Assembly (NCBI GenBank): GCA_037447605.1
Contig: CM074816.1
Location: forward strand, 1 to 64,000
Direction: 5' to 3'
Source of the DNA: Zygnema circumcarinatum SAG 698-1b
Lineage: Eukaryota > Plantae > Zygnematophyceae
DNA length: 64,000 bases
Shown here: positions 44,436 through 64,000 of the stretch, one piece after another
How the letters are laid out: every line of letters starts with the position of its first letter
How positions within the stretch are numbered: position 1 is the stretch's first letter
Made by a program: the position numbers and the translations under genes
Notes under the pieces: model-generated
Seen by the model: the letters and a program-made list of their open reading frames with translations, nothing else
What the model was told of the DNA's origin: nothing
Database searches by the model: none

Positions 44436-47400
44436 TCAAACTGCTTCACATGTAACCAACACGGACGGCCGATTCACGACCGGTTGATCTGAAAGGAAGT
44501 CGTTCTCCATGTGCTGTCCGTTATGGCTAGAATTCCGTTCAACTGCTGCAGCTACCGCCGGCTTTTCCAGAGGTTCTTTCGTCCATTTGAAGCCTTGACC
44601 GACTCTTTTAAAGAGGAGCCCGCATCCCTTTACCGGACCCAAAACAAACCCTGAAAATCCCCTACATATTCCCCAAAAAAGTCCTTTAATTCCGTCGCGG
44701 CTATATGCTCCGTAGGGTTCCGTTACGAGGCCACTGCATGCCGATCCTGCAATTCAGAAATTTGAAAACAAGACCAATTAAATAGAATCCAGTTTCTTTT
44801 TAGGTCCTTCCAAAATGGATTGGCTTTAAAATGCGAGAAATATGAAGATATAAACGATGGATAGGAGAAAGCTTATTACCTATTTCAGAGAAGAATTCAC
44901 GGATACCGAGACAGATGCTATGCCACGGTTGTCGATAAATTTCCGCAGACCAATCGACGGGTTTGTATGTGACCCGTTGGTGAAATGCCGTATCTGAATT
45001 TGTGGGTGCATGGAGAAACTGGAACAAGGAGTCGCAGTTCAACGCAATCAGTTAACCCATAAAAATATTGAAGCCGGTGCAGGTTCATTCCCTCCATGAT
45101 TCAACAAAGAATATTTGTTTCTTTATAAAGCTGATCCATTATGAACACAGCTTAAATCTGTTCAACAGCAGCCTGTGTTCAACCCGCTGAACAGAACTAC
45201 TTCCCGCGGAGAAGTTTCGCAGAAAGAGGGCGCACCTGGTCTGCGCTTTCCGAGAGCTTCATTTTGCAGTCGAGGCAGAAGGAGTGCGCCGTTCTGGAGA
45301 TGTGCAACCCTCCTGCTACTCAGCGGAGGGAGAGAGGAGGAGAGAGAGTGGAGGAAAGAGGAAGAGAGCGGCTGCGCGCGTGCGAGAGAGAGAGAGAGAG
45401 AGATGTGGCAGGGGAGGGGGAGGGGAGAGAGAGATAGAGAGAGAAGTGGCAAGGGAAGGGGAGGGGGGAGAGGGAGAGAAGGGGGAGGGAGAGGAGGAAA
45501 GAGCGAGAGGGGAAAGGGAGAGGAGTGAGAGTGTGTGAGGGACGGAGAGAGAGAGAGAGAGAGAGAGAGCGCTTGCTTACTTGTGAGGATACATGTCACA
45601 CGTGATGCTTTGGACCGGCAAGTGGCGATAGAAGGCTTCAACGGCTCTCTCCACCCCATCCTCTCTGCACAATCACACGTGCGGGGCCGTACTTAGGAAT
45701 CAAGCTTAACCTAAGATTTTCCATTCTCCTCACCAATCGCCACACATAAACCGGGAGCAGACAAACCCGGCTCATGAAACTCTGCCACGCAACTTAAGGC
45801 TGAAATTTGGGATTTGGGAATGTAATAAACGTAGATTTTCCTCAATGCTGGATTCAATTTCAATTTAAACCGGTCGAAGGAAACGGGAAAAAAAAGCAAT
45901 AAGAAAATGAAAAAAAACATAACCTGGTACACACACCGATTAAGTGCATCGCTAAGTTCTTTCACCCGGGTCTGTACTTCGGGCAGCCGCAAAAATTTGA
46001 CTCCATGCAGGAAATTGGTCTCATTTAGTTCTGCGAGCGGGATTGGCGGGGGACCCACCCCCTTCGCTTGCACGAGCCCCCCCCTGTTCCATGTGCATGG
46101 TTTCAGTTCACTTTGAGAAATCCCAAAGTTACTTACTTACTTACTTTTTTTGTTTTCTTTGCTTCTTTTCTTTTGTCCCTTTTCTCAAAACGATCAGTCA
46201 CTGAAACAGATCAGCCCCCCCCCCCNNNNNNNNNNCCTTTTTTTTTTTTTTTTTTCTTCGATTTTTGAAGGACAGGATGTAAGAAACTGACCAGAAAAAT
46301 TGATCCCCGAAAAAAGGGACTACCATTGTAGGGAGGGCAGCCTTCAGTCCGGCAGCCACTGTTCCGGCCCCTCCGTGGTGCACCTACCCCCAAAGATCCG
46401 TAAACCGTTCAACGGAGAACGGAACTATGGAAAAGATCGCATGTAACAGTTGCTAAAATAAGGGTCATTTTAACTGAATTTCATATTCCACATTTCATAT
46501 TTAGTATACAAATTACATATTCTATGTTCTTAGTTCTTAGTTCATATGCTTACTGCGGCGCAACATTTGGGAAATAGCCACGTGTGCGGAACGTTATCGA
46601 TAAAGAGAATTGTGGATGGAGTTGCCATTCCCTGCAAAGCTCCGAGCTTGCCCCATCCTCTCGATATTACCCCCCTCAGACCTGCCTGCAAAAAAGGACA
46701 CAATTTTAAGCATAAACTGAAATTCTAAGTTTAAGAGAAGCTGAAACTTGTATGGTGAAAAGTTTGTGTTTGAATGGCTAATCGAAGAGTTTCTTTTGTT
46801 GGGGTCCAAAAGGATGTTTTGCAGTTCAAATTGGCCATGTTTGTTGAATTTGACTTTGACTTTGACTTCTTCTTAGGGAGAGATTTTGATGGGGGTGAGG
46901 TTTAGAAAGCACCTTTTTCAGGACAGAGAAAATTATTTCGGTAAGTTTTTGGGGATTTTTTATCGCCATGCTTCCGAAGCCGATGTAAATTGGCGGATCT
47001 CCGGATGCTAAAAAATCAGAAATTTCGGCAGGAGGGGTATATGTGGAATTAGATTGAAGATCCATGAAGCCAACCACGTCGATAAGATCGGCCCAATCCC
47101 TAAATCGGAAGAAAAAAAAAAAAAAAACCCTCAACATATGAGAAAGGTAAAACGGGGGAAAAGGCATATATCATTGAATGTTGCGTCGTTTGAGCCCAAG
47201 ATCCTTTTTAATTTCTAAGAAAAAAGCTAAATCTGCTGAATTTTTGAAACCAGAGTCTACGAGTTTTTAATTATTGTCTTTAGATTATTAAGTTTTTTAA
47301 TCGAATTGATACCGTGGCTTCGGCGCCAGCAACGGACTCCATGCGAAGGAAAACGGAACTGAGAGGCGATGCAGAATTGTTGCAGACCCGTCCGGCCATA

Positions 47401-50107
47401 GGAGAGGGCTGAGCTCCAAAGCGCTTGTACGGAACTGGAGAGGAAGGGAGAGGAGGCATGTGTGTGTGTGTGAGAGAGAGAGAGAGGAAAAGGGACAGAG
47501 GTAGAGAGAAGAAGGGAGAGAGCGAGAGGTTGAGAAAGAGGATCGAGAAAGGGAAAGGGACAGAGGTAGAGAGGAGAAGGGAGAGAACGAGAGGGTGAGA
47601 GAGAGGATCGAGAGAGGGAAAGGGACAGAGGTAGAGAGAAGAAGGGAGAGAGCGAGAGGGTGAGAGAGAGGATCGAGAGAGGGAAAGGAACAGAGGTAGA
47701 GAGGAGTGAAAGAGACAGAGCAAAGGAGGGAAAAAAAGTGGGAGGAGGGAGGGAGGGAGGGAGGCAGGGGAGGAAGGGAAGCGGGGCTTACATCATTAAT
47801 AATATCCATAACACCACTGTTCATAAAAAATTCGACACCGTAATAAGATAGCCAATTAGAAATAGATCTCCTCCCGGGCGTGTAGGGAAGTCGAGAAAAT
47901 GGATGCGGATATTCCTTTGTTGGGCTGCAATAGTGCTAATTTCAAATAAGTGCGATCGGAAACTGTTAACTTAAATCGAGTAAAATTAATTGCATTATTG
48001 AATCCCTCTCTTTTTTAGTCCAAATTTCCTAATGTTGCAACAAGCGAAATGTGATCAAGCGAGTCAAACACAAAAAATAAAGGAAATGTGGCTCAGGAAA
48101 CTTATTTTTTCTTTATTATTGAAAGAAATTAAAATTAATTATTTCTCAACGGCTAGGATTTGCCGCACCTCCAGGGCATTGTGAACACAATATGAAGAGG
48201 TACGCCAAGTTTTTGAGCACAATGCAGATGGCCTGTTCAGAGAAATGAGTATCCAGCAATCGCTCAAAATGGATACTTTAGTTATATGGGAAAGGAAAGA
48301 CACTCGCTTCTCCATTCTTGATGAACATGCATTCCTATTGATAATGAGTTGAGACCAACGACAAAGAAAATTCAACTCAGTGGCTGTCGAGGCTTACTAA
48401 AGTCAACATAGAACTTAATTGTAGCAACACATTTTCTTAGTTAACTCGTTAATTGAGAGGCTAAATCTGTAAAAAGGATCCGAGTTTGAATGTGTATGTG
48501 TATGCACGTGTGCATTTTTTTGTGAGAGAGTGAGAGAGAAAGAAAGAAGGAAGGGAGAAAGTGAGAGAGGGAAAGAGAGCGACAGGGTGAGAGCGCGGGA
48601 GGGAGAGGGAGAGAGAAGGAGAGAGAGAGAAGCCCACCAGATGCTGGCGGATTGGCGATGATTGCGTCTGCACGGAAAGGGGCACACGTGTCGAGCGAGG
48701 GTTGGACGCAGGCAGGCCACGTGGAGAAGATAATCTTGCGATATTCGCTGCGCTGATGGTGCAGTTCCGACAGTCGCGACGGAAAAATGCCGCAGTTTTC
48801 AACCATGGCTGAGCCACCACCAGATTTTACAAGTATTGCAGAGATGAATGGAGAGGAGAAATCATCGACAAGTGTTTGTAGGATATTAAGCACTTCAGAT
48901 TCGGTTCATCGGCTAAATTGAAGGCGAAGTTTGAGTTCACATTTAAGTTTAGATTGAGCTTCAGATTTGAGTTTCTTCTGCATTTACCTGCACTCAAGTA
49001 TTCGGGATCGCCTCCAAGGGGAAAGAATTCGAGACCGTGGCTCTTCACAAAGTCGGAATACATGTCATTTGTTGCTAACCTACACTCAAAAGATTTCGCA
49101 GTTAAAGTGCAGTTAGTTAAGTGAGGTTCAAAGCATTTGGAGTCAGTGTAAGTTCAATGTAAGGTTCGATAGAGGTGAGGGACGAATCAGTAATGGATCC
49201 ATGTGAGGGTCTGTGATGATTGCGATTTGAACAGCGTGAGCTAAAATTGAAGAGGTAGTTTTTTTTTTATGAACACAGAATTTTAAGCAGCTTTTAAAAG
49301 GTATTATATGGATGGGAAAAATCACCTCACATGATGACCGTGAACTTCAGAAAGTCGCAACCCCAAAGCGACGAATGGTTGGATATCGCCCCGGGTTCCG
49401 ACCACCTGCCCTTTGAAGGTAGACTGTGATGATTGTAACGAGGGAAGCGGGGAGAGGAAGGGGCGCAGAGAGAGAGAGAGGGAGACCTTCTGAACGGCTG
49501 CCGTTCCTTTGGAAGCAATCAACAATGTAGGCAGACAGGAGAGAGGGAGAGGGGAATGGTGGATAAAATAGAGGGAGGAGGGATTACAGGGAGATTCTGT
49601 TTGAGGATCATTGTGAGGGAGGGAGGGAGGGAGGGAGAATGTGACTAGGAGATGAGAGGGAGTGGAAGGGGGGGGGGGAAGAGGGGGTGCGGGCAGCGGG
49701 GGAGGAGAGCGAGAAAGAATGGGGGAGAAAGAGATTGCCACATTTCACATTTTCTACCAGTCAAAATCCCCTGGACAGTCAGTCAATTTGAATAAAAAAC
49801 ATTCTTAGAAAAAGCCACCAAGACAAACCGGATCATTCTTTCCGAAATTCTACAGGTGAAATATAAACAACATAGCAGTTAAAATCTCACCACAAAAGAG
49901 TGGCATTCTCACCATGATCACAATCTGCATCCGTGGAACTCCTCTCGCCTGCTCTGCATTGAAACCATCCTCCAAGTCTGGGAGTTCTGAAACCTCAACT
50001 CCTTTTCCATCAGAAAATGTTCCATACCGCATACCTCCACCTTTGCAAACATTTCTATGTGCGTGACTATGGCCTGCAGTTTCGCATGTGTTTTCTTCCA
50101 CCTTCAT
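44436..50107 (-). CDS. Sterol 3-beta-glucosyltransferase-like (GT1, UGT80 family), many exons
   Basis: Exonic motifs in order: [128 protein letters not shown]. Start codon and distal 3' exons are less certain. Confidence 0.88.
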
Positions 50108-51387
50108 GGCCTCCCCCTCCCTTTCTCTTCCCTTCTCGCCCTCTCCCTCTCCCTCTCCCTCGCCCTCCCCCTNNNNNNNNNNCTCTCCCTCTCCCTCTCC
50201 CCTCTCCTTCTCAACCTCTTCTCACCGTTCCTTTCTTCAAACCCTACCAACTAAACTGACAACAAATCTTGTCTCTCCCTCCTTACCAATCCCTCCAAGC
50301 CTCACTGCAACCCCTCCATCCTCTCACCCTTCCTTCCAGCCCGCCCGCCCACAGGCCCACAGCAGCCCGGCCCTCCTCCAGGTGCCGGCCCCTCCCCCCT
50401 GCAAACCCTAAAACTGAACGACGGCCATAACTGCGACATGGAACAACCCTGCATGCCTCCCTTCTTGACACGACCTGGGCTGTCTTGTCACGCCACGTAA
50501 TCGATGGTTCGGAAGTGTCAACTGCCACGTGTCGCGTAGTCCTGGACCGGCTACACAAATTGCATGACACGTGGCAGCACCACAGGCGGCATGCTGCCAC
50601 GTTTCGGGAGACTAGTGGCTGACTGGGAGCATCAAAATTTCGAGGATGCTTCTGAAAGCGTACGGAGCTTTTCCTTTTCTTTTCTTGTTTCAAGTCTGTC
50701 GATCATCTGTGACTGGCTCACCTTGGTCCTACATTTCGTCTTTGTCCATGTGCACTTGATGGACTGCCAGTATGAGGCCAATGCCAATTCATCATTCATT
50801 CAGTTCTAATGGAGACTCGTCCAAATGCGATTCGAATACTACTCGAGTTGCCATTGGAAGCTGAAAGACTATAGTCCGCAATGGGGAAAGGCTCCCAGAG
50901 GCTGTGAGCCTTCCATCAACAACATGAACATCACAAAGGCATCCCTCATTCAGCAAACTTGGAATATTTTCATAACCGAAGAAGAGTTGTTCCACAACGT
51001 CTATAGCTGCTTCTGAGCTATAGACAACCTAGCCTTTAGGGTTGTCAGTTTGCGGTTTCGTGTCTGTAGGGAAGCCCGGTAACTATCCAGACTAATTCTT
51101 GTGGGAAGGGAATTCGTTTCATGTTGGAGGACTTCTGTCAACGCTAACGCAGCCTCCTGCTCGCCTTTTTTCTTATTGAACTTATTGGGTTGCCACATTC
51201 CAGCCTCCATTCTAACTATATACACTGCTCTACGATAAGTTAAGCGGAACTGCATCATGCAACCGCCAGCAGCATGCTTCGATCCTCAGCTCCGACCAAA
51301 AGGGTACACCCTTCCCCTTACCTCCAACCCAAAGGCTACCTAACCCTAACCCTAATCGTAAGCCTAACCGTTAATTGAACCTTAACC

Positions 51388-54300
51388 CTAAAACGAAGCA
51401 AGAATCTCCGGATCCCTTGTAGGGCTCGTGGTCTGGGAGACGCGACGCGAGTGGCGACGTGATGAGCCTTCTAAGATCATTTCAATGGTGCTTCCATCCG
51501 TGGAATTAGCTCCAGAAAGTGGGGGGAGGTAAGGCAGGAGCCCACCGTGCTTTGTGCCTATCAGCTGCACATCATCTCTCCCATTCACACTTTCCCCTAT
51601 CACGTCCTGCACTGACCGCCCTCCTTTCACAGAGCCTTCCTGTACACGGAAACCGTAACAAAGAAAAACACAGTCAGAGCTTGCGTATCCTGACATCCCA
51701 GGCCGTCTCAGTAACATTAACAAGACCAATTCTTGTATGAAGACCCAGTACACGTCTCTAGAGATGATTACATGCTAGTAATAATAATAATTATAATAAT
51801 AATAATAATAATAATAGTAATAGTAATAGTAGTAGTATTATATGTCTGCACGGCACATGCCATGATGCAACGTCTTACCGGGTCCCATGAATTGTTCCGA
51901 TTGGCTTTGAATCGTGCATCATGGTCGAAAAAGAAGACCACAACGGTCATGTCATCGTGGTAGGCTCGCCGTTGTCCTGAGCCCATCCGCAGCAAGTCCT
52001 GATAGTTCACCTCGTGAATCTGCGCTGCACGCTGAAGGGCAGCACGTACCAATTTTCGAGCCACGTCCTGAAAAGAAAAATGAGGAGAACAAAGGGGGGA
52101 GGGGAGATTAAAGGACATTCAGGGTTTCCTTGCCAAGTACACTGAGCAGAAGGGGGTTAGAAGGAGTGCTGTTCACAGGAAAACAAACGAAGGAAAGGAG
52201 AGAGGGGGAAGAGTGAAAGAGAGAGTGAGACCTTCTTTGGCGAAGAGGCCACAATATCGACAGCTTCCTGATTGCTGATCAGCTTAAAGAGGCCATCCGA
52301 AGCAACAATGAGAAACGCATCGTGAGGTGAAAGAAGGCGAACGGCGATGTTGGGCTCCGCAGTCAGAAGTGGAGGTTTGAACGGCTCCGAGACACGGAAC
52401 CGCGCAAATAACGGTTCTCTGTTAAACTCTTCGGCCTTCAGATAGCAGTCTCCAAATGATTTTGTGACCTGCAAACGTTGGAAACAACTTAGCTAGCTGT
52501 GTTGACTGAATTTGAACAAACTTGGAGGGATTCGTGATGGGTTTGAGAGGGTTTCTTTCAATAGGAGGAACACGCACCGGAACCTTCCCCTTCACCAAAA
52601 AGGTGCCATTCACTTCCACCACCGCATCTGCCATATCTGCATGCTCTGCTCGGAAAGCATCCCGAACTGCTGCAACCTGCAAGTCATGGTCCACTGACAG
52701 CTGCAGAGCTCTGCATTCTCTCCCACTCTCCGCTTTCCGAACCTGTTCAACCCATAACCATCCCCAGAACAGGTTCTTCAGCTTCTACAGACACTCCTAT
52801 TTCCTCTCTCTCTCTCTCTTTCTCACCCACCCTGTCCCTCGCCCTCCCCCGCTCTCTCACTCCTGTCTCTCTCTCCTGTTTCTTTTTTTTTTTTTGCTCG
52901 AGACTCACCTGCCCAAGAACGGCTCTGCAGTTCCCAACGTTGGCAACCCAAATTGCATTGGCGGTGATAATGCAGGTGGCTGAGCATGCCCCAACTGTGG
53001 CCAGCTGAGGGGCAGCGGGAAAGGCCTGCCGTACGGAGTGCATATATGAGGTTTCGGTTTTGGAAAAAGCGGCTCGAATAGAGTCTGCGGAGATGCTGCC
53101 GCCCTGCTGCACGAATTGCTCTGCAGATTATGAAGGATGGGGTTGGCTCAGAACAGGCTCAGAAGGTGAGCTGTGGTAAGAACTGCACAACCTCTGAAAA
53201 GCTTTTTTTAGCCTCTAAGCTTGACTTTTAGGGAACGAAGAAAACTGACCCATAAGAACCCAAAACTGCGTTAAGATTCACATGCTCCCCGGGCACATAT
53301 TTCTGCTCTGTTTTTTCTTGTAGTGCTACGTTCTGGTTATGGTCTTGTACGCCTAAAGTCCAAACAGCTAAACTAAGGACACGTGAAGTGGAGATTTCAA
53401 TTTCCTAAAACTCCTTAACATGGGGTCCACTTAGGCGAGGCATTTTCCCGTTCCTGTGTCAAACTATACGATGATTCTTTGTGAACATATCACGACTTCC
53501 ACATATGCTTACACCTTCATCCCATGTTTCCGGTTTTTTCATTGAAGGGAGTGTTCCATGTGAGATGGAAGAGGAGCAGCCTATGAAGAAAGCGTGAGCA
53601 GAGGAGTAGAAGGAAAGAGAGAGGAGAAGAGAATAATAAGAATGCTCCTTAATGAAAGAAAGATTGAGCTTTGAGTGAAGTGTTGAATCCTTTGCTTGTG
53701 CATTCATCGTGAAAGGATCCGAAGGGACTGAGGGGTGAGTTCATCAAGTCTTTGCTGGGAGTGTAAAGAGTGGCAATTCCATCTCACCTTGTCATTCCGT
53801 TTGCTCACACATCATTGCATGGCATCATTCACTTTCCCTCTGTGCAGAAATTGGGGGCGGAGCCCTCTCAGGATTTGAGAGAAGAAAGAAAGGGAAAGCT
53901 TGGAAAGTGCTGGGGGTGCAATTCTCACCCTTCAGGTTTTCGTAAAGATGTTCTTTGAGGAATTCCGCCGTATCCGTTCCGCCATGGCCGTCATGCACTC
54001 CGATGTAGACTCCGCTAGAAGACGACAAAACCTGCAATTCAAACAGACAGTGCGACAAGTAAAAATTGACATTCTCCACAGGATTCAAACGGCTTAGAAC
54101 TATTCGAGTGGCTTCTTTAGCTCAATCAACACATACCTATCATACAAATATCTAACATATCATAATATCTGTAATCTAAGCATGTAAACAATCGCCAAAA
54201 AGGGGAACTGGGAATGGGATGCCTCACCTCCCCGGTATCTTCCATCACATAGTTCGCCTCATACATCGCCAATGAGAAAAACCCGAAGGGAGTTGACTCT

Positions 54301-57300
54301 AACGCTTTGTACCATACATCTCGCCGATGGTAAGCTCCCCTTGTGTACATGTCAGGCCTCCCTGCTCCCTCCCTCTTCCTAAGTCCGTACGCCTTCAAAA
54401 ACCCTAAAATTCCCGTTCTCCTCCGAGCAAACCTCTCTGTGATCTTCCTGTTAGCAAATCGCTGTTCAAAGGCATCTCCGATATCTTCTTCTCCACCATG
54501 GAAAGCAACGTCAAGCCCCACCTGCATTTCCAGGTTTTAAGAGAAAAGCTGACGATTAGGTGGATTTTGGAGTGGAAACTCGGGCATGCCTTTTTCGGAA
54601 AGGAGACTATAAATGAAAGGTAATTGGATATTCATAACAGTTTGAGCTGAAACAATGAGGTCAAGGTAGTGCAACCCACCTCTTCCTCCTGACGCTTCAC
54701 ACGCAAGAGACCGAAGTAGTTGAGGAAGAAAAAGAGAATGAACGTAGTTATGCCAACCCAAAAGTATACCACAAGCAGCCCAATGATCTGCACACCCGCA
54801 CCACAGTACTGGTGATTTTTCAAATGACTCCAATTTGGAACACAACCATCTATATGTTCATAATGGTACACAAAGCGACTTTGTATTGCACTCCGATTTG
54901 TGCATCTTCATATAACATTTCTATCCACATAGAACATCTCTTTTCCTTTCATCTTCACTGTTGCAACCGAATAGATTTGCATCCCACCTGAATGCCCAGC
55001 TGATGGAAACCTCCTCCGTAGAACAGTCCGTATCCTGCCGGTTGATCTATGCTGTATGTGTTCCGAATTCCACGTTTGGTAGCAAAAAAACCAACAGAGA
55101 GGCCCCCCCACGTTCCACAGAAGAGGTGGGTGGGGGCTGCTTGGACCACATCGTCAATCTTCAGCTTCTTCATGCACCACACACCAGCCAAATACCACAA
55201 ACCTGCCCCCACGCCTGCAAGAAACGAAGATGCTTTCCTTGTGTAAGATTCTTCCTCCGTAAACCCCATTCTGCATTTGCCCGGCCAAGATCCGCCTCCC
55301 TCCCTCTCCCACTCCCTCTCCCTCTCCCTCTCGCTCTCCCTCGCCTCTTCCCGTTTGCAGCGTCAAGAAAGTCCAAACTAAAGAGTAGAATCAAAGCGTG
55401 GGAGGATCGAGGGAGGAGAAGGGAAGGACAACAGTGGAGTGACGGCGAAGCATGAGTGCAGGAGGGCAGAAACAGGGAAAATTTGAGGAAAGGAAAGGGA
55501 GAAAGAGAAAGAAAAAGGAACGAAAAAGAGAAGGACGGGAGAGGAGAAAGAAAGGCGGATAATGGTGAGAAGTAGGCCTGAGGGAGGAGCATACCGACAA
55601 TGGCTGCTGCGTAGGGCTGCACAAGGCTGCTTGAAGCGCATGCAGCTACAAGCCCCCCTATAACTGCATTGAAGGTGTCTTCGGGAGTGGGCTCCCCTTG
55701 GCGGTGGGTGAGCACAAAAACAGTGAGACCTGAGAATGCTGCTGATAGGGTAGTGTTCATACACACACGTGCCACCTCGTAGGCCCACACATCAAACTCC
55801 TGATTCAACAGATTCACAGAGCCACCATTGAAGCCGAAGAATCCCACCCACAGGATGATGGTGCCTGCGGCAATGTAGACCTGCAAAGAGGAATGGGCCA
55901 CACTATGGAGGTCAGGTGAGAAGGTCGCTCTTGAATGTGGGTAATGGAATACGAGGCAAGCTGCAGAGGAGAAACCTTGCTTTAGGTAAGGTTTAGATAC
56001 GTGCGACAAACCATAGAGAAATGAGGAAGGTCACACTGTACGGGTCAGAGTGAATGTGAGTTCAGCAACAGGTCAGTCCAGCACATGAGGAGTGACAAAA
56101 ATCACGTTATGTTGTGGAGAGTTTCTAAGGTGTGATAGTTGGAATGTGGCCCATCAACATGAGACGAGAGAGCGAGGGATATAGTGAGAGGGGGAGAAGG
56201 GAGAGATAGAGTGAGAGCGAGAGATACCATGGAGTGGCCCTTCAAAGGCACTGGATTCCCCTCGATGTCGTATCGGCCAATCCGTGGGCCGACCATCCAT
56301 GCCCCGACCAACGAGGTGACGCCACCTGTCACGTGCACTACCATGGAGCCTGCGTTGTCCAGCACTCCATTTGTGTGCAGAATGATGACGTTGCGTGTAG
56401 GGCTAAAGAGGCCGAAGTCCGACCATAGGAGATGGGCAATCACGGGATAAATCAAGGAGCTCAGAAAGAAGCTGAAAAATGCCCCAATCCCACCAAGTTA
56501 CTTAAATTCCTGCACAACTAGAGACTTCATGGAAGTGGCATAAATGCCGTGGATAATGGACAACATCATTTGACAAGTGCAAACAATTGAATGGGAGGAA
56601 AAGAAATCATATTCTGTGGAAGGGTTCAAGGAGCCTCCTTGCATTTTTTTAATAGAAAGAGTAGGCATAAAAAAACCTCAAAAGTGTTATGTGAAGAACT
56701 AGCATCTGGAGAAATCAGCATAGGCCTGTATGCAGCTGGAAAAAGTGCACATTACTTGTAGAAGAGGTAGGCCCATAGGTGAGTCCTCTCAGCCACCGCT
56801 CCCGCGATGATGGTAGTGGACGTTGCTGCGAATGTGAACTGAAAGAACCACTGCACACCGTTCCCTCCGCTTGCGTTGCCAAAGAAGGCGTTCTGGACAC
56901 AAAGGCATCGAGGGGATGAGAGGGGGGAGAGAGGAGGGACAGCATGGGAGAGAAAGGGGGGGGAGTAGAAAGCGTAGGGACGAGAAGAGGACATGACAGA
57001 GACGGGGAGAGACGAGAGGAAAAGAGAGAAAAAGAGGAAAGAGAGAAAGAGAGGACGGAAAGGTAGGAAGTGGCCAAGAGGAAAAAGGGAGGGGAAAAAG
57101 GAGAGGATGAAAACAAGTCTGGAGGATGAGCAAGAAAAGCATCTGATTATGAGAGTTTCGAGAACCGAAGGCTTGGGACTGTTGCCCTTCACATGAGAAG
57201 TCGTGTACAGGAAAGCAGCCGTAGCCACCTCAAAAATAGCCAAAATTAACTTCTGGTAAGGAAAATCGTCCTCTGTACCTTATGATCGTCCTCGTATTTC

Positions 57301-58246
57301 CACCCAAAATACTCGTTCCCGTGCCCAAACCCGATTGCATAGCCAAACATCCAAAAAGCAATAGCACACACGCACGTGTCGAGTACATTCTTGATCATTA
57401 TGTTGCGCGTATTTTTGTAGCGCACAGTCCCTGCTTCGAGAAGAGAAAACCCGAGCTGCATTACACAGAAATCAAATCAAATCAATCAATAAAAGTAAAG
57501 CATTGGAGAAGAATTGCGGAGTCACACCGATGGGAGGATTCAAAGTCACCTCTAGGGACTACGCATACTTTCATGCTAAAACAGGCAGGGTTTGATGAAT
57601 ATTGACTGAAGCACGCAAGTTGTCCTCAAGTTAAACTTGCGAACGGCTGCAGTCAAATGCCTTGGGGAGGGAAATGAGGGCAAAGTTGCAAAACAAGGAT
57701 TAGAGACAGAAAGCGAGAGACAGAGAAGAGTAGGAGAAGAAAGAAGAAGAAAGCATATGTTCCGTACTCTGATCTGAGCGCCTGCAGTCTGATTTAGGGT
57801 AATTGTATAAGAAAAGACGGTCATGGAGAGAGGCCAAGGGGAGACGGGGAAGATAAGGAGAGGATGGAGCATAGAGAAACTGCGACGGTGAGGGAGAAAC
57901 AGACAAGGAGAGGGAGAGGGAGAAGGACAGGGAGTGAGAGCAAGCAGGAGGGATAAAGTGGCAGACAATAGGGAGGGACGGGAATAGGACAGAGAGAGCG
58001 GGAAGGGGGGGGGGGTGAGGGGACAGAGAGAGAAAGTGTAGGAGGGTGATGAAATACCTGCATCAGGAAGACAAATATAGAGGAAGTCAACCTCCATAAG
58101 TGCGCAGAAACCACATTAGACATGTCCAGTTTTTTTTGAAGCTCCTCAGCTTTGATAGTCAGAACGCTCAACGCACTCAGAGTCTCATTCAAAAGCGTCG
58201 AATTCTGCAATAATGTCAAATTCATCGCAGTGTCCGGGAAAGCCAT
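51388..58246 (-). CDS. AMT1-type ammonium transporter fused in frame to a clade-D-like PP2C phosphatase (14 exons, approx. 939 aa)
   Basis: Exons 58246-58058, 57455-57279, 56892-56756, 56471-56228, 55880-55595, 55214-54988, 54787-54680, 54521-54228, 54031-53929, 53120-52909, 52742-52578, 52468-52232, 52067-51879, 51639-51388; all GT-AG, phases consistent, 2820 nt. AMT motifs: [69 protein letters not shown]2C motifs: [30 protein letters not shown]. Confidence 0.88.
51778..51840. repeat. (ATA/GTA)n microsatellite in the last intron of the AMT-PP2C gene
   Basis: Direct reading. Confidence 0.9.
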
Positions 58247-61011: not shown

Positions 61012-64000
61012 ATGGCCAAGCAGGAGCGGGTAGTTAACACTGGCGCTGCGCTGCTGTTGATGATGCAAATCATGATAAACCACGGATTCCAAATCTCAGC
61101 AGCTGTCGGAATGGAGGTAACTGAGCATTCAGAGTCGCTTTTCTGGTGGTTTGACGTATTTTTTGTTTCTTAGAAACCGGGTGATAGCTTGAATTCATTT
61201 TGACATTCCTTCAGAGAAGTGTTTCACCTTTGAATGGCTGTGTATGAAAGTAGTTAAGCGATTTTTACATTGCTGTTTTTTGGACGGGGCTACAGGCGGA
61301 TCGTCACCCTCTGCCAGATGTGGTTCCTCATTGGGCAGTGCAAGAGTCCTTCGTTGGACAAGCGCCGCCTTCTCACCCTGTTCATATTGGAGTGTATCTT
61401 TCATGGCGGAACCAGACAGGGCTAGAGGAGTTTGCTCAGGCAGTTTCCAGTCCTGGGCATTCGCTCTTCGGAAAATATCTCACGCCAGAAGCGTTCCATG
61501 CTCAGTACTCTCCAATCATTCAAAGCGTCAATGGTGTTTCAGAATGGTTGCAACAGAATGGTTTCCGTGTGGTAATTGTAGCAGCGAGCCGCAAACAGAT
61601 CATAGCAGAAGGAACTGTTGAACAGGCCGAGGCTGCGTTCGGAGCTAAGCTCGGAATGTATGCGGTAAGTTTACACAAATGAGGAAATCCTGGCAACCAG
61701 GCTTGCTCATCCTTCAATTCATTTGCTGCAAGTGCTAGGAGTGACTCTTAGTACTTTCTCCGATGCTAACCTGTGCCATCAACGGCTTGTCTGAAGCATT
61801 TCAGGCACGTTAAGAGTGGCATAGTTTTCAGACTTTGTAATTAAAAAATCTTTCACGCGCATGCGTCGATCCTCTTGGGATAAACTGACGAAGTCCTGCA
61901 TAGCTATTTGCCTCAAAACAAGGTTAAGCTGCTTCCACAGGTACGGGGCCATACTCTGCGGGCGCCCTCAAGTGTTCCCTCGCTTCCTCTCTCATTGGTT
62001 GGTTTGGGCGTCGCTACGGTGACTGGATTGGATCAAGGGTCATATTTAAGAAAGCCATACATTACCAAGCGTTCTGGTTTTTCTGTCGAGGAAAAGGCTT
62101 TGGAAACACAACCGGACGCAACTGATACTCTTTGCTACTTTACTCTTGTTCCCGATGGTAATTCGACGGCTCCGAACTGTGGATACAGGGCAAGTCAGGT
62201 AATATCACCTTCGTCTACATAACCATTCTGATGCCTGGAGAGGTGAAATAAAAATCTCGGTCACGGAGGTAAGCATTGCTCGCCAATCGTCCTGGCTGCT
62301 ATGTGTGCACAACTGCATTGGAACACTCTGATGCCTTGTAAGAAGGCTTTGCGTCCTCCTGACACCCTAACCATTTGAAGACTTCATGAAACTCTGTAGC
62401 TCACACCACAAAGACGCTCCTTGGAAGTCAGATAACCCTGTTTGTTTGCAAATATTTATTCTCTATTTCCCTCCTTATAGCGTAACGAGCACGTCCTGCA
62501 TCGTTCAGCTGACCATGAAAGGCTCCTGATACAGTCTAGATGATGATCATCTAGAATGCTCAATAAACTGATTTACCGTCCTTATGGACCTTGATGGCTC
62601 TTCTTTGTTTTGCAATTGTCAAAGTCACAACTTAGCACAGAGCTTGTTATCGTATGATTCATCGTTTTCATAGGGGCGAGCTGCTTGATAAGCTTTGCAG
62701 GATAAAGCGATCATCGCGCTGCCACTTTATGTTTTGGCTGGAATAAAAAGGTGGTGTTATGCTCCTTTTTGCTGCTTGCAGATCCGCACAGCCTACGGAG
62801 TTCCATCATGGGCTCAAGGAGAGGGACAATCTGTTGCAATCATTGCTGGTTATGCCTCTCCATTTATACAAAATGATCTCAATACGTGGGCTCGCCAAAT
62901 AGGAGAAAACTCCACACAAATCACGAGCTTGTTTCCAGATTACACATACACCTATGAAGAAGCTCTTTTCAACCCAGCACCAGGGTACAACCCGGGTTGG
63001 CAAACTGAGGAGAACCTTGACATAGAGGTAAACAACCTACGCATGATGACTTCCTCCCTTTTGAGGCCTTATCTTTTTCTTTTCTCGAATTGATAAGTAA
63101 CTTCAGGTGAATGGATGAAGCGGTCCCATTTCCTTCAAACGAAAATTTTCGTTATGATGACAGACTGTCCATGGAATAGCTCCCAAGGCATCCATCTTCT
63201 ATATCGGTGCTGCAAGTACGGCCGATTCAGATCTCATTGCCGCCCTTGCTGCTGTTCTTGACTTCGGCCTTGCGACAATCGTAACGAACTCCTACGGGAG
63301 CCCTCTTCCTCCACCTGCTTTACAGGATCCAGCAACTACGATTCGCCAAAACCAGGTACCGGTTTGGCTATTATAAATCTTGCAAATATTCAAGGCAAGC
63401 AATGTTTAGGGACCTCGAGCAGCAGAGAATTGGCCCATGAAAATCGCAGGACATTGTATACAAAAAGGACTTCTCTATTCAGTGAAAACGTTCTTGAGAA
63501 TGTGCTTCATGGAACTCCTGCTTCCTCATTGAGAGAATAAATTCCCATTCATGACAACCACTAATTCGACTTAAGAGTTGAGTTGAGAAGTGATCTTTGC
63601 AACAGGTCTCCTTTCGCACCCAATTCCTTAAAGTTGCAAAACCTTGAAAACTCACTCGCTTTCATGTTGCAGCCATGGACAGATATCCTTATTCAAGCAG
63701 CTGCACAAGGTGTGGGTGTTTACTTTGCTTCTGGTGATTCTGGAGATGATTCCCCGATTTATGGCTATCTAGGATACCATGCGACGGATTACCCTGCCTC
63801 AGATCCATGGGCCATTGCTGTCGGAGGGACTTCGCTGGGAATTTCGGAGGATGGCGGAAGGGAATTTGAGGTGTACTGGGGCAGCCTCAGCCGTAATGCA
63901 ACTTCCCAGACATTTCTAGGTGGCGGTGGAGGTGGAATTTCTGTTTATGGAGTCCCATTTTACCAGGAGGGAAGCAGTGCTGTGACAACATTTCTTGATG
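61012..64000 (+). CDS. S53 sedolisin/kumamolisin-family serine-carboxyl protease, 3' end outside window
   Basis: Exons 61012-61116 (signal-like), 61296-61664 (pro-kumamolisin domain: GKYLTPEAFHAQYSP..VSEWLQQNGF), 61941-62198, 62782-63027 (EENLDIE: catalytic Glu/Asp), ~63164-63354 (VHGIAPKA..NSYG), ~63672-end (AAAQGVGVYFASGDSG, YPASDPWAIAVGGTSL, GGGGG). Confidence 0.88.

What the first reader, a model, noticed from the sequence alone, without database searches (positions are those of the whole stretch)
51388..58246. Ammonium transporter-PP2C.D phosphatase fusion: candidate eukaryotic ammonium transceptor
Seen: the 294-nt exon 54521-54228 encodes, without a stop, both the AMT1 C-terminal signature (..EEE|[10 protein letters not shown]) and PP2C motif 1 ([28 protein letters not shown]). 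There is no intergenic space, and any AMT transcript completing its HGG motif reads into the phosphatase. Upstream exons give a full AMT channel with the twin His, D160-, W148-, F215- and S219-equivalent residues retained; downstream exons give a full PP2C. Established: clade-D PP2Cs (N-terminal W..D/L..G.FS.A..QAN..LED pattern, C-terminal SVKGG) dephosphorylate plasma-membrane H+-ATPases and are inhibited by SAURs. Plant AMT1s are gated by C-terminal phosphorylation. Bacterial Amt-signalling fusions exist, e.g. the Kuenenia Amt5-histidine kinase. Inference: this is a membrane-anchored phosphatase whose activity could be coupled to NH4+ flux, linking nitrogen sensing to H+-ATPase/pH control or to dephosphorylation of neighbouring AMTs. 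I know of no described AMT-PP2C fusion in plants or algae, but could not search.
Basis: partly seen in the sequence, partly recalled or inferred. Interest (0 to 1): 0.95.

Follow-up and report, generated by a model that had tools for sequence, protein, structure and literature searches.

The report
Ammonium transporter fused to PP2C phosphatase
This is a real, intact gene joining an ammonium transporter to a protein phosphatase, but the fusion was already named AMPC in algae and bryophytes in 2024, and its function is still untested.

Summary
On the minus strand, 14 exons with GT-AG introns (58246-51388) give one open 939-aa frame. It encodes an AMT1-type ammonium transporter (PF00909 across exons 2-7) followed by a clade-D-like PP2C. 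Exon 8 (54521-54228) carries the transporter's C-terminal motif, a linker and the first phosphatase motif.

The model aligns end to end with AMT-PP2C proteins of Closterium, Mesotaenium, Marchantia, Chara and Klebsormidium. It also aligns with intron-free single ORFs on RNA-seq contigs of two related organisms.

The claim that the fusion is undescribed is wrong. PNAS 2024 (PMC11665922) named it AMPC and reported it in charophytes and bryophytes, without a functional test.

What this work adds:
- The Amt half scores best against the bacterial ammonium sensors Sd-Amt1 and Ks-Amt5, and keeps six of their seven sensing-site ligands.
- The C-terminal region is the most conserved segment (88%). The AMT1 phospho-switch Thr460 is Ala, which argues against simple self-dephosphorylation at that site.
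- This copy alone has Asn at the third-metal Asp (GDCR to GNCR), so its catalysis may be impaired.

Verdict: a new member of a known kind, of moderate interest.

The parts
51388..58246 (-). Whole AMPC gene: 14 coding exons, 13 GT-AG introns, 939 codons plus TAG
   Evidence: Hand-built model translated without internal stops. It aligns end to end with full-length AMT-PP2C proteins and is colinear with the cDNA-derived P0017 in tblastn.
58058..58246 (-). Exon 1: extracellular N-terminal tail with three N-x-S/T sequons (N9, N15, N20) and the start of TM1, ending at Q63
   Evidence: The tail is poorly conserved (14% identity).
54680..57455 (-). Exons 2-7: Amt transmembrane core (57455-57279, 56892-56756, 56471-56228, 55880-55595, 55214-54988, 54787-54680)
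   Evidence: Consecutive PF00909 matches covering profile positions 16-386 of 399. Twin His H214/H374, Phe gate F143/F266, W184, D206, S270 and N320 are present.
57375..57437 (-). Codons for sensing-site (N1/N2) ligand equivalents E70, N86, D89 and T90. Q63 lies at 58060-58058, T149 at 56814-56812 and A152 at 56805-56803.
   Evidence: Signature from PMC11152129, mapped through the Sd-Amt1 alignment and located. The last ligand (Ser107 of Sd-Amt1) is Ala here.
54228..54521 (-). Exon 8, the junction exon: end of the Amt C-terminal region ([10 protein letters not shown], with A462 at the Thr460-equivalent position), linker (467-519) and the PP2C.D N-terminal motif up to MEDTGEV (D551)
   Evidence: The C-terminal region 448-466 (54706-54680 plus 54521-54492) is 88% identical across AMPCs; the linker is 16% identical.
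51388..54031 (-). Exons 9-14: PP2C catalytic domain and C-terminal tail (54031-53929, 53120-52909, 52742-52578, 52468-52232, 52067-51879, 51639-51388), with SVKGG at residues 859-863
   Evidence: PF00481 matches on exons 10 and 12; alignment with AMPC and PP2C.D proteins.
52930..52932 (-). Codon AAC = Asn652, where every homologue has the third-metal Asp of the GD[SC]R motif
Evidence: All 13 family sequences that reach this position have D (the 3'-truncated P0003 included). 146 of 150 PP2C motif matches in hand have D, and E occurs only in two TAB1-like rows (one named TAB1, one unnamed).

Best explanation
The locus is one intact gene for an AMPC protein. It has an N-out, 11-helix AMT1-type ammonium transporter or receptor module. 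The cytosolic C-terminal region of that module runs, through a roughly 50-residue poorly conserved acidic-then-basic linker, into a clade-D-like PP2C phosphatase.

Shown:
- the single open reading frame;
- the domain identities;
- end-to-end orthology with AMT-PP2C proteins from Klebsormidium to Marchantia;
- single-ORF transcripts in two related organisms;
- retention of the pore and selectivity residues, and of six of the seven ligand positions of the bacterial ammonium-receptor N1/N2 site;
- very strong conservation of the C-terminal region.

Inferred, at roughly 35-40%: the Amt trimer works as the input module. Ammonium binding or passage moves the C-terminal region, the same element that gates AMT1 and that carries the transducer in the bacterial sensors Ks-Amt5 and Sd-Amt1. 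That movement would change the activity or reach of three membrane-tethered PP2C.D-type phosphatases toward nearby plasma-membrane phosphoproteins, with the H+-ATPase C-terminus as the prime candidate.

In this copy the third-metal Asp is Asn. The phosphatase may therefore be weakened, or may hold substrate rather than turn it over.
For: - Gene model and frame.
- Domains.
- Orthologues carrying both Pfam domains in Closterium, Mesotaenium, Marchantia, Chara and Klebsormidium. The window is 48-67% identical to the 12 complete orthologues over about 810-960 aligned positions.
- Uninterrupted 2736-nt ORFs, identical in four RNA-seq assemblies (L002-L005), and one in a fifth run from another organism (L006).
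- Indirect expression evidence here: run X1, labelled RNA by guess, holds 0.50 of the sampled words of 53900-54800. The expectation is 0.476 if only exons 7-9 are present (my calculation). X1 holds 0.00 of intron 9, where DNA runs hold 1.00.
- The Amt half scores best against Sd-Amt1 (2e-51) and Ks-Amt5 (1.5e-49), ahead of AmtB (2e-35) and Mep2 (about 1e-29).
- N1/N2 ligand equivalents present.
- C-terminal region 88% conserved against a TM core at 63%.
- PP2C.D affinity.
- Architecture published as AMPC.
Against: - No read or cDNA from this species was seen spanning 54680/54521 or 54228/54031. A PP2C-only isoform from M514, or an AMT-only isoform through intron-7 retention (stop after 15 codons), cannot be excluded.
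- The N1/N2-type residues are shared with ordinary AMT1 transporters. For AtAMT1;1 no ligand-dependent switching was seen (PMC13745463), so these residues do not show sensing.
- The linker is unconserved and was modelled at low confidence, which is a poor basis for rigid conformational coupling.
- Asn652 may mean this copy has little phosphatase activity.
- No experiment on any AMPC was found in the library searched.
Confidence: 0.8

Rival explanations
1. Two neighbouring genes are read as one. The AMT mRNA would end in or before exon 8, by polyadenylation or intron retention. The PP2C would be made only from its own start site and the ATG at 54350 (M514).
For: M514 lies 12 residues upstream of the PP2C.D N-terminal motif. 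Retaining intron 7 would give a stop after 15 codons.
Against: - There is no intergenic space, and exon 8 is in frame on both sides.
- The same junction sequence ([19 protein letters not shown], linker, W..FS.A.YEANY.MED) is kept in one ORF from Klebsormidium to Marchantia.
- Spliced single-ORF transcripts exist in relatives.
- M514 is not conserved.
- RNA run X1 holds about the exonic share of exons 7-9 and none of intron 9.
Confidence: 0.05
2. Self-regulation, the idea offered in PNAS 2024. The fused PP2C would dephosphorylate the inhibitory C-terminal phospho-site of its own or neighbouring Amt subunits, keeping the transporter switched on.
For: AMT1 transporters are shut by C-terminal phosphorylation at Thr460, and a PP2C (ABI1) activates AMT1s (PMC9516733; PMC13745463). 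The idea itself is stated. The phosphatase is tethered next to the C-terminal region.
Against: - The Thr460-equivalent residue is Ala462 here, and Ala or Val in all AMPCs aligned, so that site cannot be phosphorylated within the fusion.
- Three plain eukaryote-type AMT relatives in hand have Ser at that position; five other plain Amts have A, G, S or E.
- The mapping to AtAMT1;1 G456/T460 rests on my memory of that sequence.
- The linker has only 3 Ser/Thr residues and is 16% conserved.
- Action on separate, plain AMT1 proteins in mixed trimers remains possible.
Confidence: 0.2
3. Passive anchor. The Amt module would serve only to place a PP2C.D at the plasma membrane as a trimer, with no ammonium coupling. 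Alternatively the protein is simply a transporter with an unrelated enzymatic tail.
For: The linker is unconserved and modelled at low confidence. By my recollection, angiosperm PP2C.Ds reach the membrane by other means. AtAMT1;1 shows no ligand-driven switch.
Against: An anchor would not need its selectivity and pore residues, the N1/N2-type residues or the C-terminal region. All of these are invariant or nearly so across more than ten orthologues. The C-terminal region directly upstream of the phosphatase is the best-conserved segment of the whole protein.
Confidence: 0.15
4. This particular copy is a catalytically impaired, possibly substrate-holding, pseudophosphatase paralogue. Alternatively, Asn652 is a base-call error.
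For: - Asn replaces the third-metal Asp only in the window.
- Mutating this Asp in PPM1A (D146A/E), PPM1B (D151E) or PPM1H (D288A) abolishes activity but keeps substrate binding (PMC8567228; bioRxiv 10.64898/2026.04.23.720145).
- The only other non-Asp residue at this motif among the sequences in hand is Glu, in two TAB1-like rows, one of them named TAB1. TAB1 is, from my own knowledge, a pseudophosphatase.
Against: - Asn can still ligate a metal through its carbonyl oxygen.
- All other catalytic residues and the whole frame are intact.
- The window's PP2C branch is no longer than its sisters' (0.30 against 0.29 and 0.37), so there is no sign of relaxed constraint.
- A one-base G-to-A difference could not be checked against reads.
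- The equivalence to PPM1A D146 rests on the GDSR alignment to PDP1 and on my own knowledge.
Confidence: 0.3

Closest known systems
AMPC (AMT-PP2C) proteins of charophytes and bryophytes (PNAS 2024, PMC11665922). Examples: Marchantia polymorpha P0024, Chara braunii P0028, Klebsormidium nitens P0027 and P0029, Mesotaenium P0025, Closterium spp.
   Same: Same architecture, order and junction sequence, with end-to-end alignment at 48-65% identity. The PP2C half groups with clade D.
   Different: No protein from this species was found in the databases searched, so this is an unlisted member. It alone has Asn at the third-metal Asp. No AMPC has been tested functionally.
Bacterial ammonium receptors Ks-Amt5 (Amt-histidine kinase, PDB 6EU6) and Sd-Amt1 (Amt-HAMP-diguanylate cyclase, PDB 8QJ3/8QJ4)
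   Same: An Amt module with a cytoplasmic transducer fused to its C-terminus. These are the best solved-structure matches to the Amt half. Equivalents of Q22, F25, E29, N45, D48, the position-49 F/T, T104 and N269 are present.
   Different: The transducer is a PP2C rather than a kinase or cyclase. The link is a canonical AMT C-terminal region plus an unconserved linker, not a HAMP or helical connector. The Ser107 ligand is Ala in this clade. Whether AMPC transports, senses or does both is unknown.
Plant AMT1 transporters (AtAMT1;1)
   Same: AMT1-type sequence, with the same pore, the same N1/N2-type residues and a C-terminal E-rich GxDxxxHGG motif. The Atlas nearest clusters are eukaryotic, Streptophyta-rich AMTs. 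The loop residues said to dock the C-terminal region (the R and K in GTVRxKNT, and GPRIGR) are conserved, by inference.
   Different: Thr460 is Ala. The FAY tail after HGG is replaced by a linker and a phosphatase. The short N-terminal tail has no Cys, so the N-terminal disulfide described for AtAMT1;1 is unlikely.
Clade-D PP2Cs of land plants (Arabidopsis PP2C.D1-D9; proteins named PP2C 38/60/64/67)
   Same: 40-46% identity (measured for the orthologue P0017) over the catalytic domain, a shared N-terminal WYK..G.FS.A..xAN..xED motif and a shared C-terminal S-x-K/R-G-G.
   Different: Fused to a membrane protein. AMPC PP2C domains fall outside the strongly supported land-plant plain-D clade. 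The motif reads EAN rather than QAN. SAUR binding and H+-ATPase dephosphorylation are untested.
Bacterial AMT-SpoIIE fusions
   Same: An ammonium transporter joined to a PPM-fold phosphatase, mentioned in PMC11665922.
   Different: That paper reports them as phylogenetically separate in both domains, implying independent origin. I did not examine them.

Membership tests
AMPC (AMT-PP2C fusion) | PF00909 followed by PF00481 in one open reading frame | tested here: met
   The product is 939 aa with no internal stop.
AMPC (AMT-PP2C fusion) | Full-length colinear homology to named AMPC-type proteins of charophytes and bryophytes | tested here: met
   BLASTP covers about residues 13-890 against P0017, P0016, P0025, P0024, P0028, P0027 and P0029. 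The PP2C tree places the window in a 95%-supported AMPC clade.
AMPC (AMT-PP2C fusion) | Both halves on one mRNA in this organism | tested here: inconclusive
The feature is met in relatives.
Amt/Mep/Rh channel | Twin His, Phe gate, and the vestibule Trp, Ser and Asp | tested here: met
   H214/H374, F143/F266, W184, S270 and D206, mapped through the Sd-Amt1 alignment and paper.
Ammonium receptor class (AmR) of Pflueger et al. 2024 | N1/N2 signature Q-x6-E-x15-N-x2-D-[F/T]-x54-60-T-x2-[S/T] | tested here: inconclusive
   Q63, E70, N86, D89, T90 and T149 are present. The homologous last position is A152, not S or T. The regular expression matches only through the offset T146/T149. The signature is also carried by transporting AMT1s.
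Ammonium receptor class (AmR) of Pflueger et al. 2024 | Binds ammonium without net transport and switches a fused transducer | not testable with these tools
   Needs electrophysiology and enzyme assays.
Plant AMT1 with C-terminal phospho-switch | Phosphorylatable Thr/Ser at the AtAMT1;1 Thr460 position of the C-terminal region | tested here: not met
   A462 in [10 protein letters not shown], and Ala or Val in all AMPCs aligned. Three plain eukaryote-type AMTs in hand have Ser there; five other plain Amts have A, G, S or E. The Thr460 mapping rests on my own knowledge of the AtAMT1;1 sequence.
PPM/PP2C active phosphatase | M1/M2 metal ligands (Asp of the MED motif, Asp of the DGHGG motif, Asp of the SDG motif, Asp of the C-terminal DD/DN motif) | tested here: met
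   D551, D568 (followed by G569-H570), D772 and D831/D832.
PPM/PP2C active phosphatase | Third-metal Asp of the GDSR motif (PPM1A D146) | tested here: not met
   N652, with D in all 13 homologues that reach the position and in 146 of 150 motif matches.
PP2C clade D | Clade-specific N-terminal motif, C-terminal S-x-K/R-G-G, and nearest neighbours and tree position with PP2C.D | tested here: met
   Support for the joint AMPC plus PP2C.D group is only SH-aLRT 81, and outgroup sampling was thin.
PP2C clade D | Inhibition by SAUR proteins; dephosphorylation of the plasma-membrane H+-ATPase penultimate Thr | not testable with these tools
   These are biochemical properties. PMC11665922 tested only the single-domain Chara PP2C.D, not an AMPC.

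The most novel reading that the evidence does not exclude
AMPC is a true streptophyte ammonium transceptor. Occupancy of the AMT1-type pore or N1/N2 site would move the ultra-conserved C-terminal region and so gate three tethered PP2C.D phosphatases toward the plasma-membrane H+-ATPase. That would tie proton pumping to electrogenic NH4+ entry, and would make this the ancestral membrane wiring of PP2C.D before SAUR control evolved. In this copy, Asn652 would turn the enzyme into an ammonium-controlled substrate trap rather than a turnover phosphatase.
Probability: 0.2. Interest if true: 0.8.

Novelty: new member of a known kind. Interest (0 to 1): 0.35.

Why it matters
Whether plant AMT1-type proteins sense ammonium as well as carry it is an old open question. 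The 2026 AtAMT1;1 structure paper concludes that AMT1;1 keeps the bacterial sensor's recognition region but 'lacks the signaling module' (PMC13745463).

AMPC proteins are AMT1-type modules from the plant lineage that do carry a signalling enzyme, and Marchantia has one. They are therefore the natural system in which to test AMT1-type sensing and the origin of PP2C.D control of the proton pump.

That opportunity is already visible from the 2024 paper, so this locus adds only details:
- Thr460 is lost.
- The C-terminal region is the most constrained segment.
- The Amt half is closest to the solved sensor Amts.
- One natural Asp-to-Asn variant sits at the third-metal site.

Tried and rejected
No junction reads were obtained.
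2. I looked for proteins or fragments from this species in three word-index searches and one exhaustive representative search. None was found, so the look-up of encoding contigs could not give a cDNA from this species.
3. A solved-structure search with exon 10 alone returned only spurious designed repeat proteins.
4. AlphaFold2 of orthologue P0017 with a 14-row alignment gave a weak model (pLDDT 61, pTM 0.46). The linker region 439-546 was almost all under 50. I did not use it for fold searches or domain-packing claims.
5. Paper searches for the run accessions of the orthologous transcripts found nothing, and the PNAS supplements are not held. The source organisms of P0016 and P0017, and the species list for AMPC, remain unknown.
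6. I considered and rejected mis-assembly or a chimeric annotation, because the fusion is conserved across six or more genera and in RNA contigs.
7. I did not paste the spliced 939-aa protein into any tool, because it has no reference. Whole-protein searches used orthologue P0017 as a proxy, and exon-wise references were used for the window itself.
Full report
**Observation**

The region was read on the minus strand and assembled by hand into a 14-exon gene. Every intron begins GT and ends AG. The 2820-nt coding sequence translates to 939 residues with a single terminal stop at 51390-51388.

It opens with [10 protein letters not shown], continues through a 53-residue linker and ends with [32 protein letters not shown]. 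The mechanical ORF list shows the same uninterrupted stretch.

Scanned exon by exon, exons 2-7 hit consecutive segments of the ammonium transporter profile PF00909 (positions 16-386 of 399). Exons 10 and 12 hit PP2C PF00481.

A check that does not depend on my splice choices used P0017, an orthologue predicted from spliced RNA contigs. In tblastn it gives 13 colinear matches that fall on exons 1-13 and cover its residues 13-850 with no loss at the exon 7/8/9 junctions.

**Is the fusion real?**

An exhaustive HMMER search with exon 8 found proteins that contain the junction sequence inside much longer chains. A word-index search with one of them (P0003) listed proteins carrying both Pfam domains in the following:
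- seven or more Closterium strains
- Mesotaenium endlicherianum
- Marchantia polymorpha
- Chara braunii
- Klebsormidium nitens (two genes)
- two unnamed organisms known only from Logan assemblies

The window's model aligns end to end with the 12 complete orthologues at 48-67% identity, for example:

| Orthologue | Identity to the window |
|---|---|
| P0017 | 67% |
| P0016 | 65% |
| Mesotaenium | 58% |
| Marchantia | 56% |
| Chara | 49% |
| Klebsormidium | 48-49% |

P0017 is encoded by an uninterrupted 2736-nt ORF with UTRs. That ORF is identical in four separate sequencing-run assemblies. P0016 is encoded likewise in a fifth run. The genomic copy here has 13 introns, so those contigs are spliced mRNAs that run through the junction.

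For this species I could not lay reads. 

Indirect evidence remains. Run X1, labelled RNA by guess, holds 0.50 of the sampled words of 53900-54800. By my count 0.476 of the 31-mers there lie wholly within exons 7, 8 and 9. X1 holds 0.00 of intron 9, where six DNA runs hold 1.00. This fits spliced expression of all three exons. It does not prove that they sit on one molecule.

**Already described**

A full-text search found 'Origin and evolution of auxin-mediated acid growth' (PNAS 2024, PMC11665922). It states that many PP2C.Ds in charophytes and bryophytes carry an N-terminal AMT domain and names the construction AMPC (AMT-PP2C). It notes that vascular plants lack AMPC and points to independent bacterial AMT-SpoIIE fusions. 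It also suggests the phosphatase may autoregulate the transporter.

That paper tested only the single-domain Chara PP2C.D, not an AMPC. No other paper in the library mentions the fusion. The two papers on bacterial sensor Amts contain none of the words PP2C, eukaryot- or algae, and mention phosphatase only in a reference title.

**The Amt half**

The canonical residues are all present:
- vestibule Trp (W184), Ser (S270) and Asp (D206)
- Phe gate (F143, F266)
- twin His (H214, H374)

They were mapped through the HMMER alignment of P0017 to Sd-Amt1 and the residue list in that structure paper.

Among solved structures, the best matches are the two bacterial ammonium receptors. Sd-Amt1 scores 2e-51 and Ks-Amt5 1.5e-49, well ahead of AmtB (2e-35), Mep2 (about 1e-29) and Af-Amt1 (2e-28).

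Pflueger et al. define a sensing-site signature, Q-x6-E-x15-N-x2-D-[F/T]-x54-60-T-x2-[S/T]. The window has Q63, E70, N86, D89, T90 and T149 at the homologous positions. The last ligand is A152. It is Ser in Chara and in one Klebsormidium protein, and Ala in zygnematophytes and Marchantia. The Asn that narrows the exit in Sd-Amt1 is N320 here.

These features do not separate a sensor from a transporter. The same paper places the transporting plant AMT1s in the same cluster. The 2026 AtAMT1;1 structures show the region conserved but without ligand-driven switching. The protein Atlas puts the nearest clusters among eukaryotic AMTs, commonest in Streptophyta.

Three N-x-S/T sequons in the N-terminal tail fit an outside N-terminus and a cytosolic phosphatase.

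**The junction**

Identity of the window to ten full-length AMPCs, by segment:

| Segment (window residues) | Mean identity |
|---|---|
| Transmembrane core (46-447) | 63% |
| C-terminal region [19 protein letters not shown] (448-466) | 88% |
| Linker (467-519) | 16% |
| PP2C.D N-terminal motif (520-555) | 64% |
| PP2C core (556-845) | 59% |

The element that gates AMT1 in trans, and that carries the transducer in the bacterial sensors, is thus the most constrained part of the fusion.

The position equivalent to the AtAMT1;1 phospho-switch Thr460 is Ala462. My memory of that sequence is G456-M-D-M-T460, against G-L-D-V-A here. It is Ala or Val in every AMPC aligned. Three plain eukaryote-type AMTs in hand have Ser there; five other plain Amts have A, G, S or E. 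The fusion therefore cannot be regulated at that site, which weakens the simplest form of the autoregulation idea. Action on separate AMT1 proteins remains possible.

**The PP2C half**

- The nearest single-domain proteins to the orthologue P0017 (40-46% identity, E about 1e-70) carry the names PP2C 38, 60, 64 and 67. To my knowledge these are clade-D names.
- The clade-D pre-catalytic motif occurs in 103 of 116 of those hits and in the window.
- S[VIL][KR]GG occurs in 96 of 116 and in the window as SVKGG.
- In a quick maximum-likelihood tree the AMPC phosphatase domains and land-plant PP2C.Ds form one group (SH-aLRT 81).
- Within that group the land-plant single-domain proteins are a 100%-supported clade. 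The zygnematophyte plus Marchantia AMPCs form a 95%-supported clade that holds the window.
- Outgroup sampling was thin, so this agrees with, but does not independently establish, the published placement.

The M1/M2 ligands are intact (D551, D568, D772, D831). The Asp of the GD[SC]R motif is Asn652 (AAC at 52932-52930). This had been noted before on this window (s1-350995). All 13 family sequences that reach this position have Asp, as do 146 of 150 motif matches among the PP2Cs collected. The only real exception is Glu, in two TAB1-like rows, one of them named TAB1.

This Asp binds the third metal. Replacing it in PPM1A, PPM1B or PPM1H removes activity but keeps substrate binding. The window's branch in the PP2C tree is no longer than its sisters', so there is no sign of decay. 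I could not check the base against reads.

**Structure prediction and surroundings**

AlphaFold2 of P0017 with only 14 aligned sequences gave pLDDT 61. Both domains were moderately confident, and the linker region 439-546 was almost entirely below 50. I draw nothing from it beyond a probably flexible linker.

The neighbours are unrelated. A gene with a pro-kumamolisin activation domain lies on the plus strand near 61.3 kb, and a weak glycosyltransferase-28-like match lies on the minus strand at 49.3-49.7 kb.

**Interpretation and verdict**

The locus is an intact AMPC gene. My preferred mechanism, held at roughly 35-40%, is that ammonium binding or passage in the Amt trimer moves the conserved C-terminal region. 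That would control access or activity of three tethered clade-D-type phosphatases toward plasma-membrane phosphoproteins, with the H+-ATPase as the obvious candidate.

The rivals are self-dephosphorylation (weakened by Ala462), passive anchoring (weakened by the conservation pattern) and separate transcripts (unlikely). In this copy Asn652 may blunt catalysis.

Novelty is limited to a new member of a published kind, plus some added detail.

Noticed in passing
window 51339-51369: A short degenerate telomere-type array, (CCTAAC) x 5.2 on the plus strand, which reads TTAGGG-like on the gene strand. It lies about 20-50 nt past the stop codon, in what should be the 3' UTR.
   Followed up: partly
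window 51779-51837: A TAA/TAG trinucleotide microsatellite of about 17 copies inside intron 13. Several other introns (1, 2, 4, 5) are long CT-rich low-complexity tracts.
   Followed up: no
window about 50100-50200: ORF translations here contain runs of X, which indicates N bases (an assembly gap) about 1.2 kb downstream of the gene.
   Followed up: no
window 61320-61682 (+): An exon-sized ORF with a strong pro-kumamolisin activation-domain match (PF09286, 2e-26). It is probably a sedolisin-type peptidase gene upstream of the AMPC gene and divergent from it.
   Followed up: partly
window 46826-49741 (-): ORF fragments with motifs [27 protein letters not shown] and [10 protein letters not shown], plus a weak GT28 N-terminal match (E 0.0013). 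They look like a sterol or UDP-glycosyltransferase gene downstream on the same strand.
   Followed up: partly
P0001 and P0002 (Closterium sp. Yama58-4 and NIES-65 annotations): These predicted proteins repeat the junction segment [23 protein letters not shown] three times before the PP2C. P0002 begins with a long GVP(M/T)YIVT tandem repeat instead of an Amt domain. This could be tandem duplication of the junction exon or an annotation artefact.
   Followed up: no
P0025 (Mesotaenium) and P0014 (Closterium NIES-54) in the family alignment: Both annotations lack all or part of the last transmembrane helix and resume exactly at [10 protein letters not shown]. This suggests a missed exon 7 and a conserved intron position at EEE|VGLD.
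   Followed up: no
I worked beside it and sent none of its letters to any search tool afterwards.
   Followed up: no
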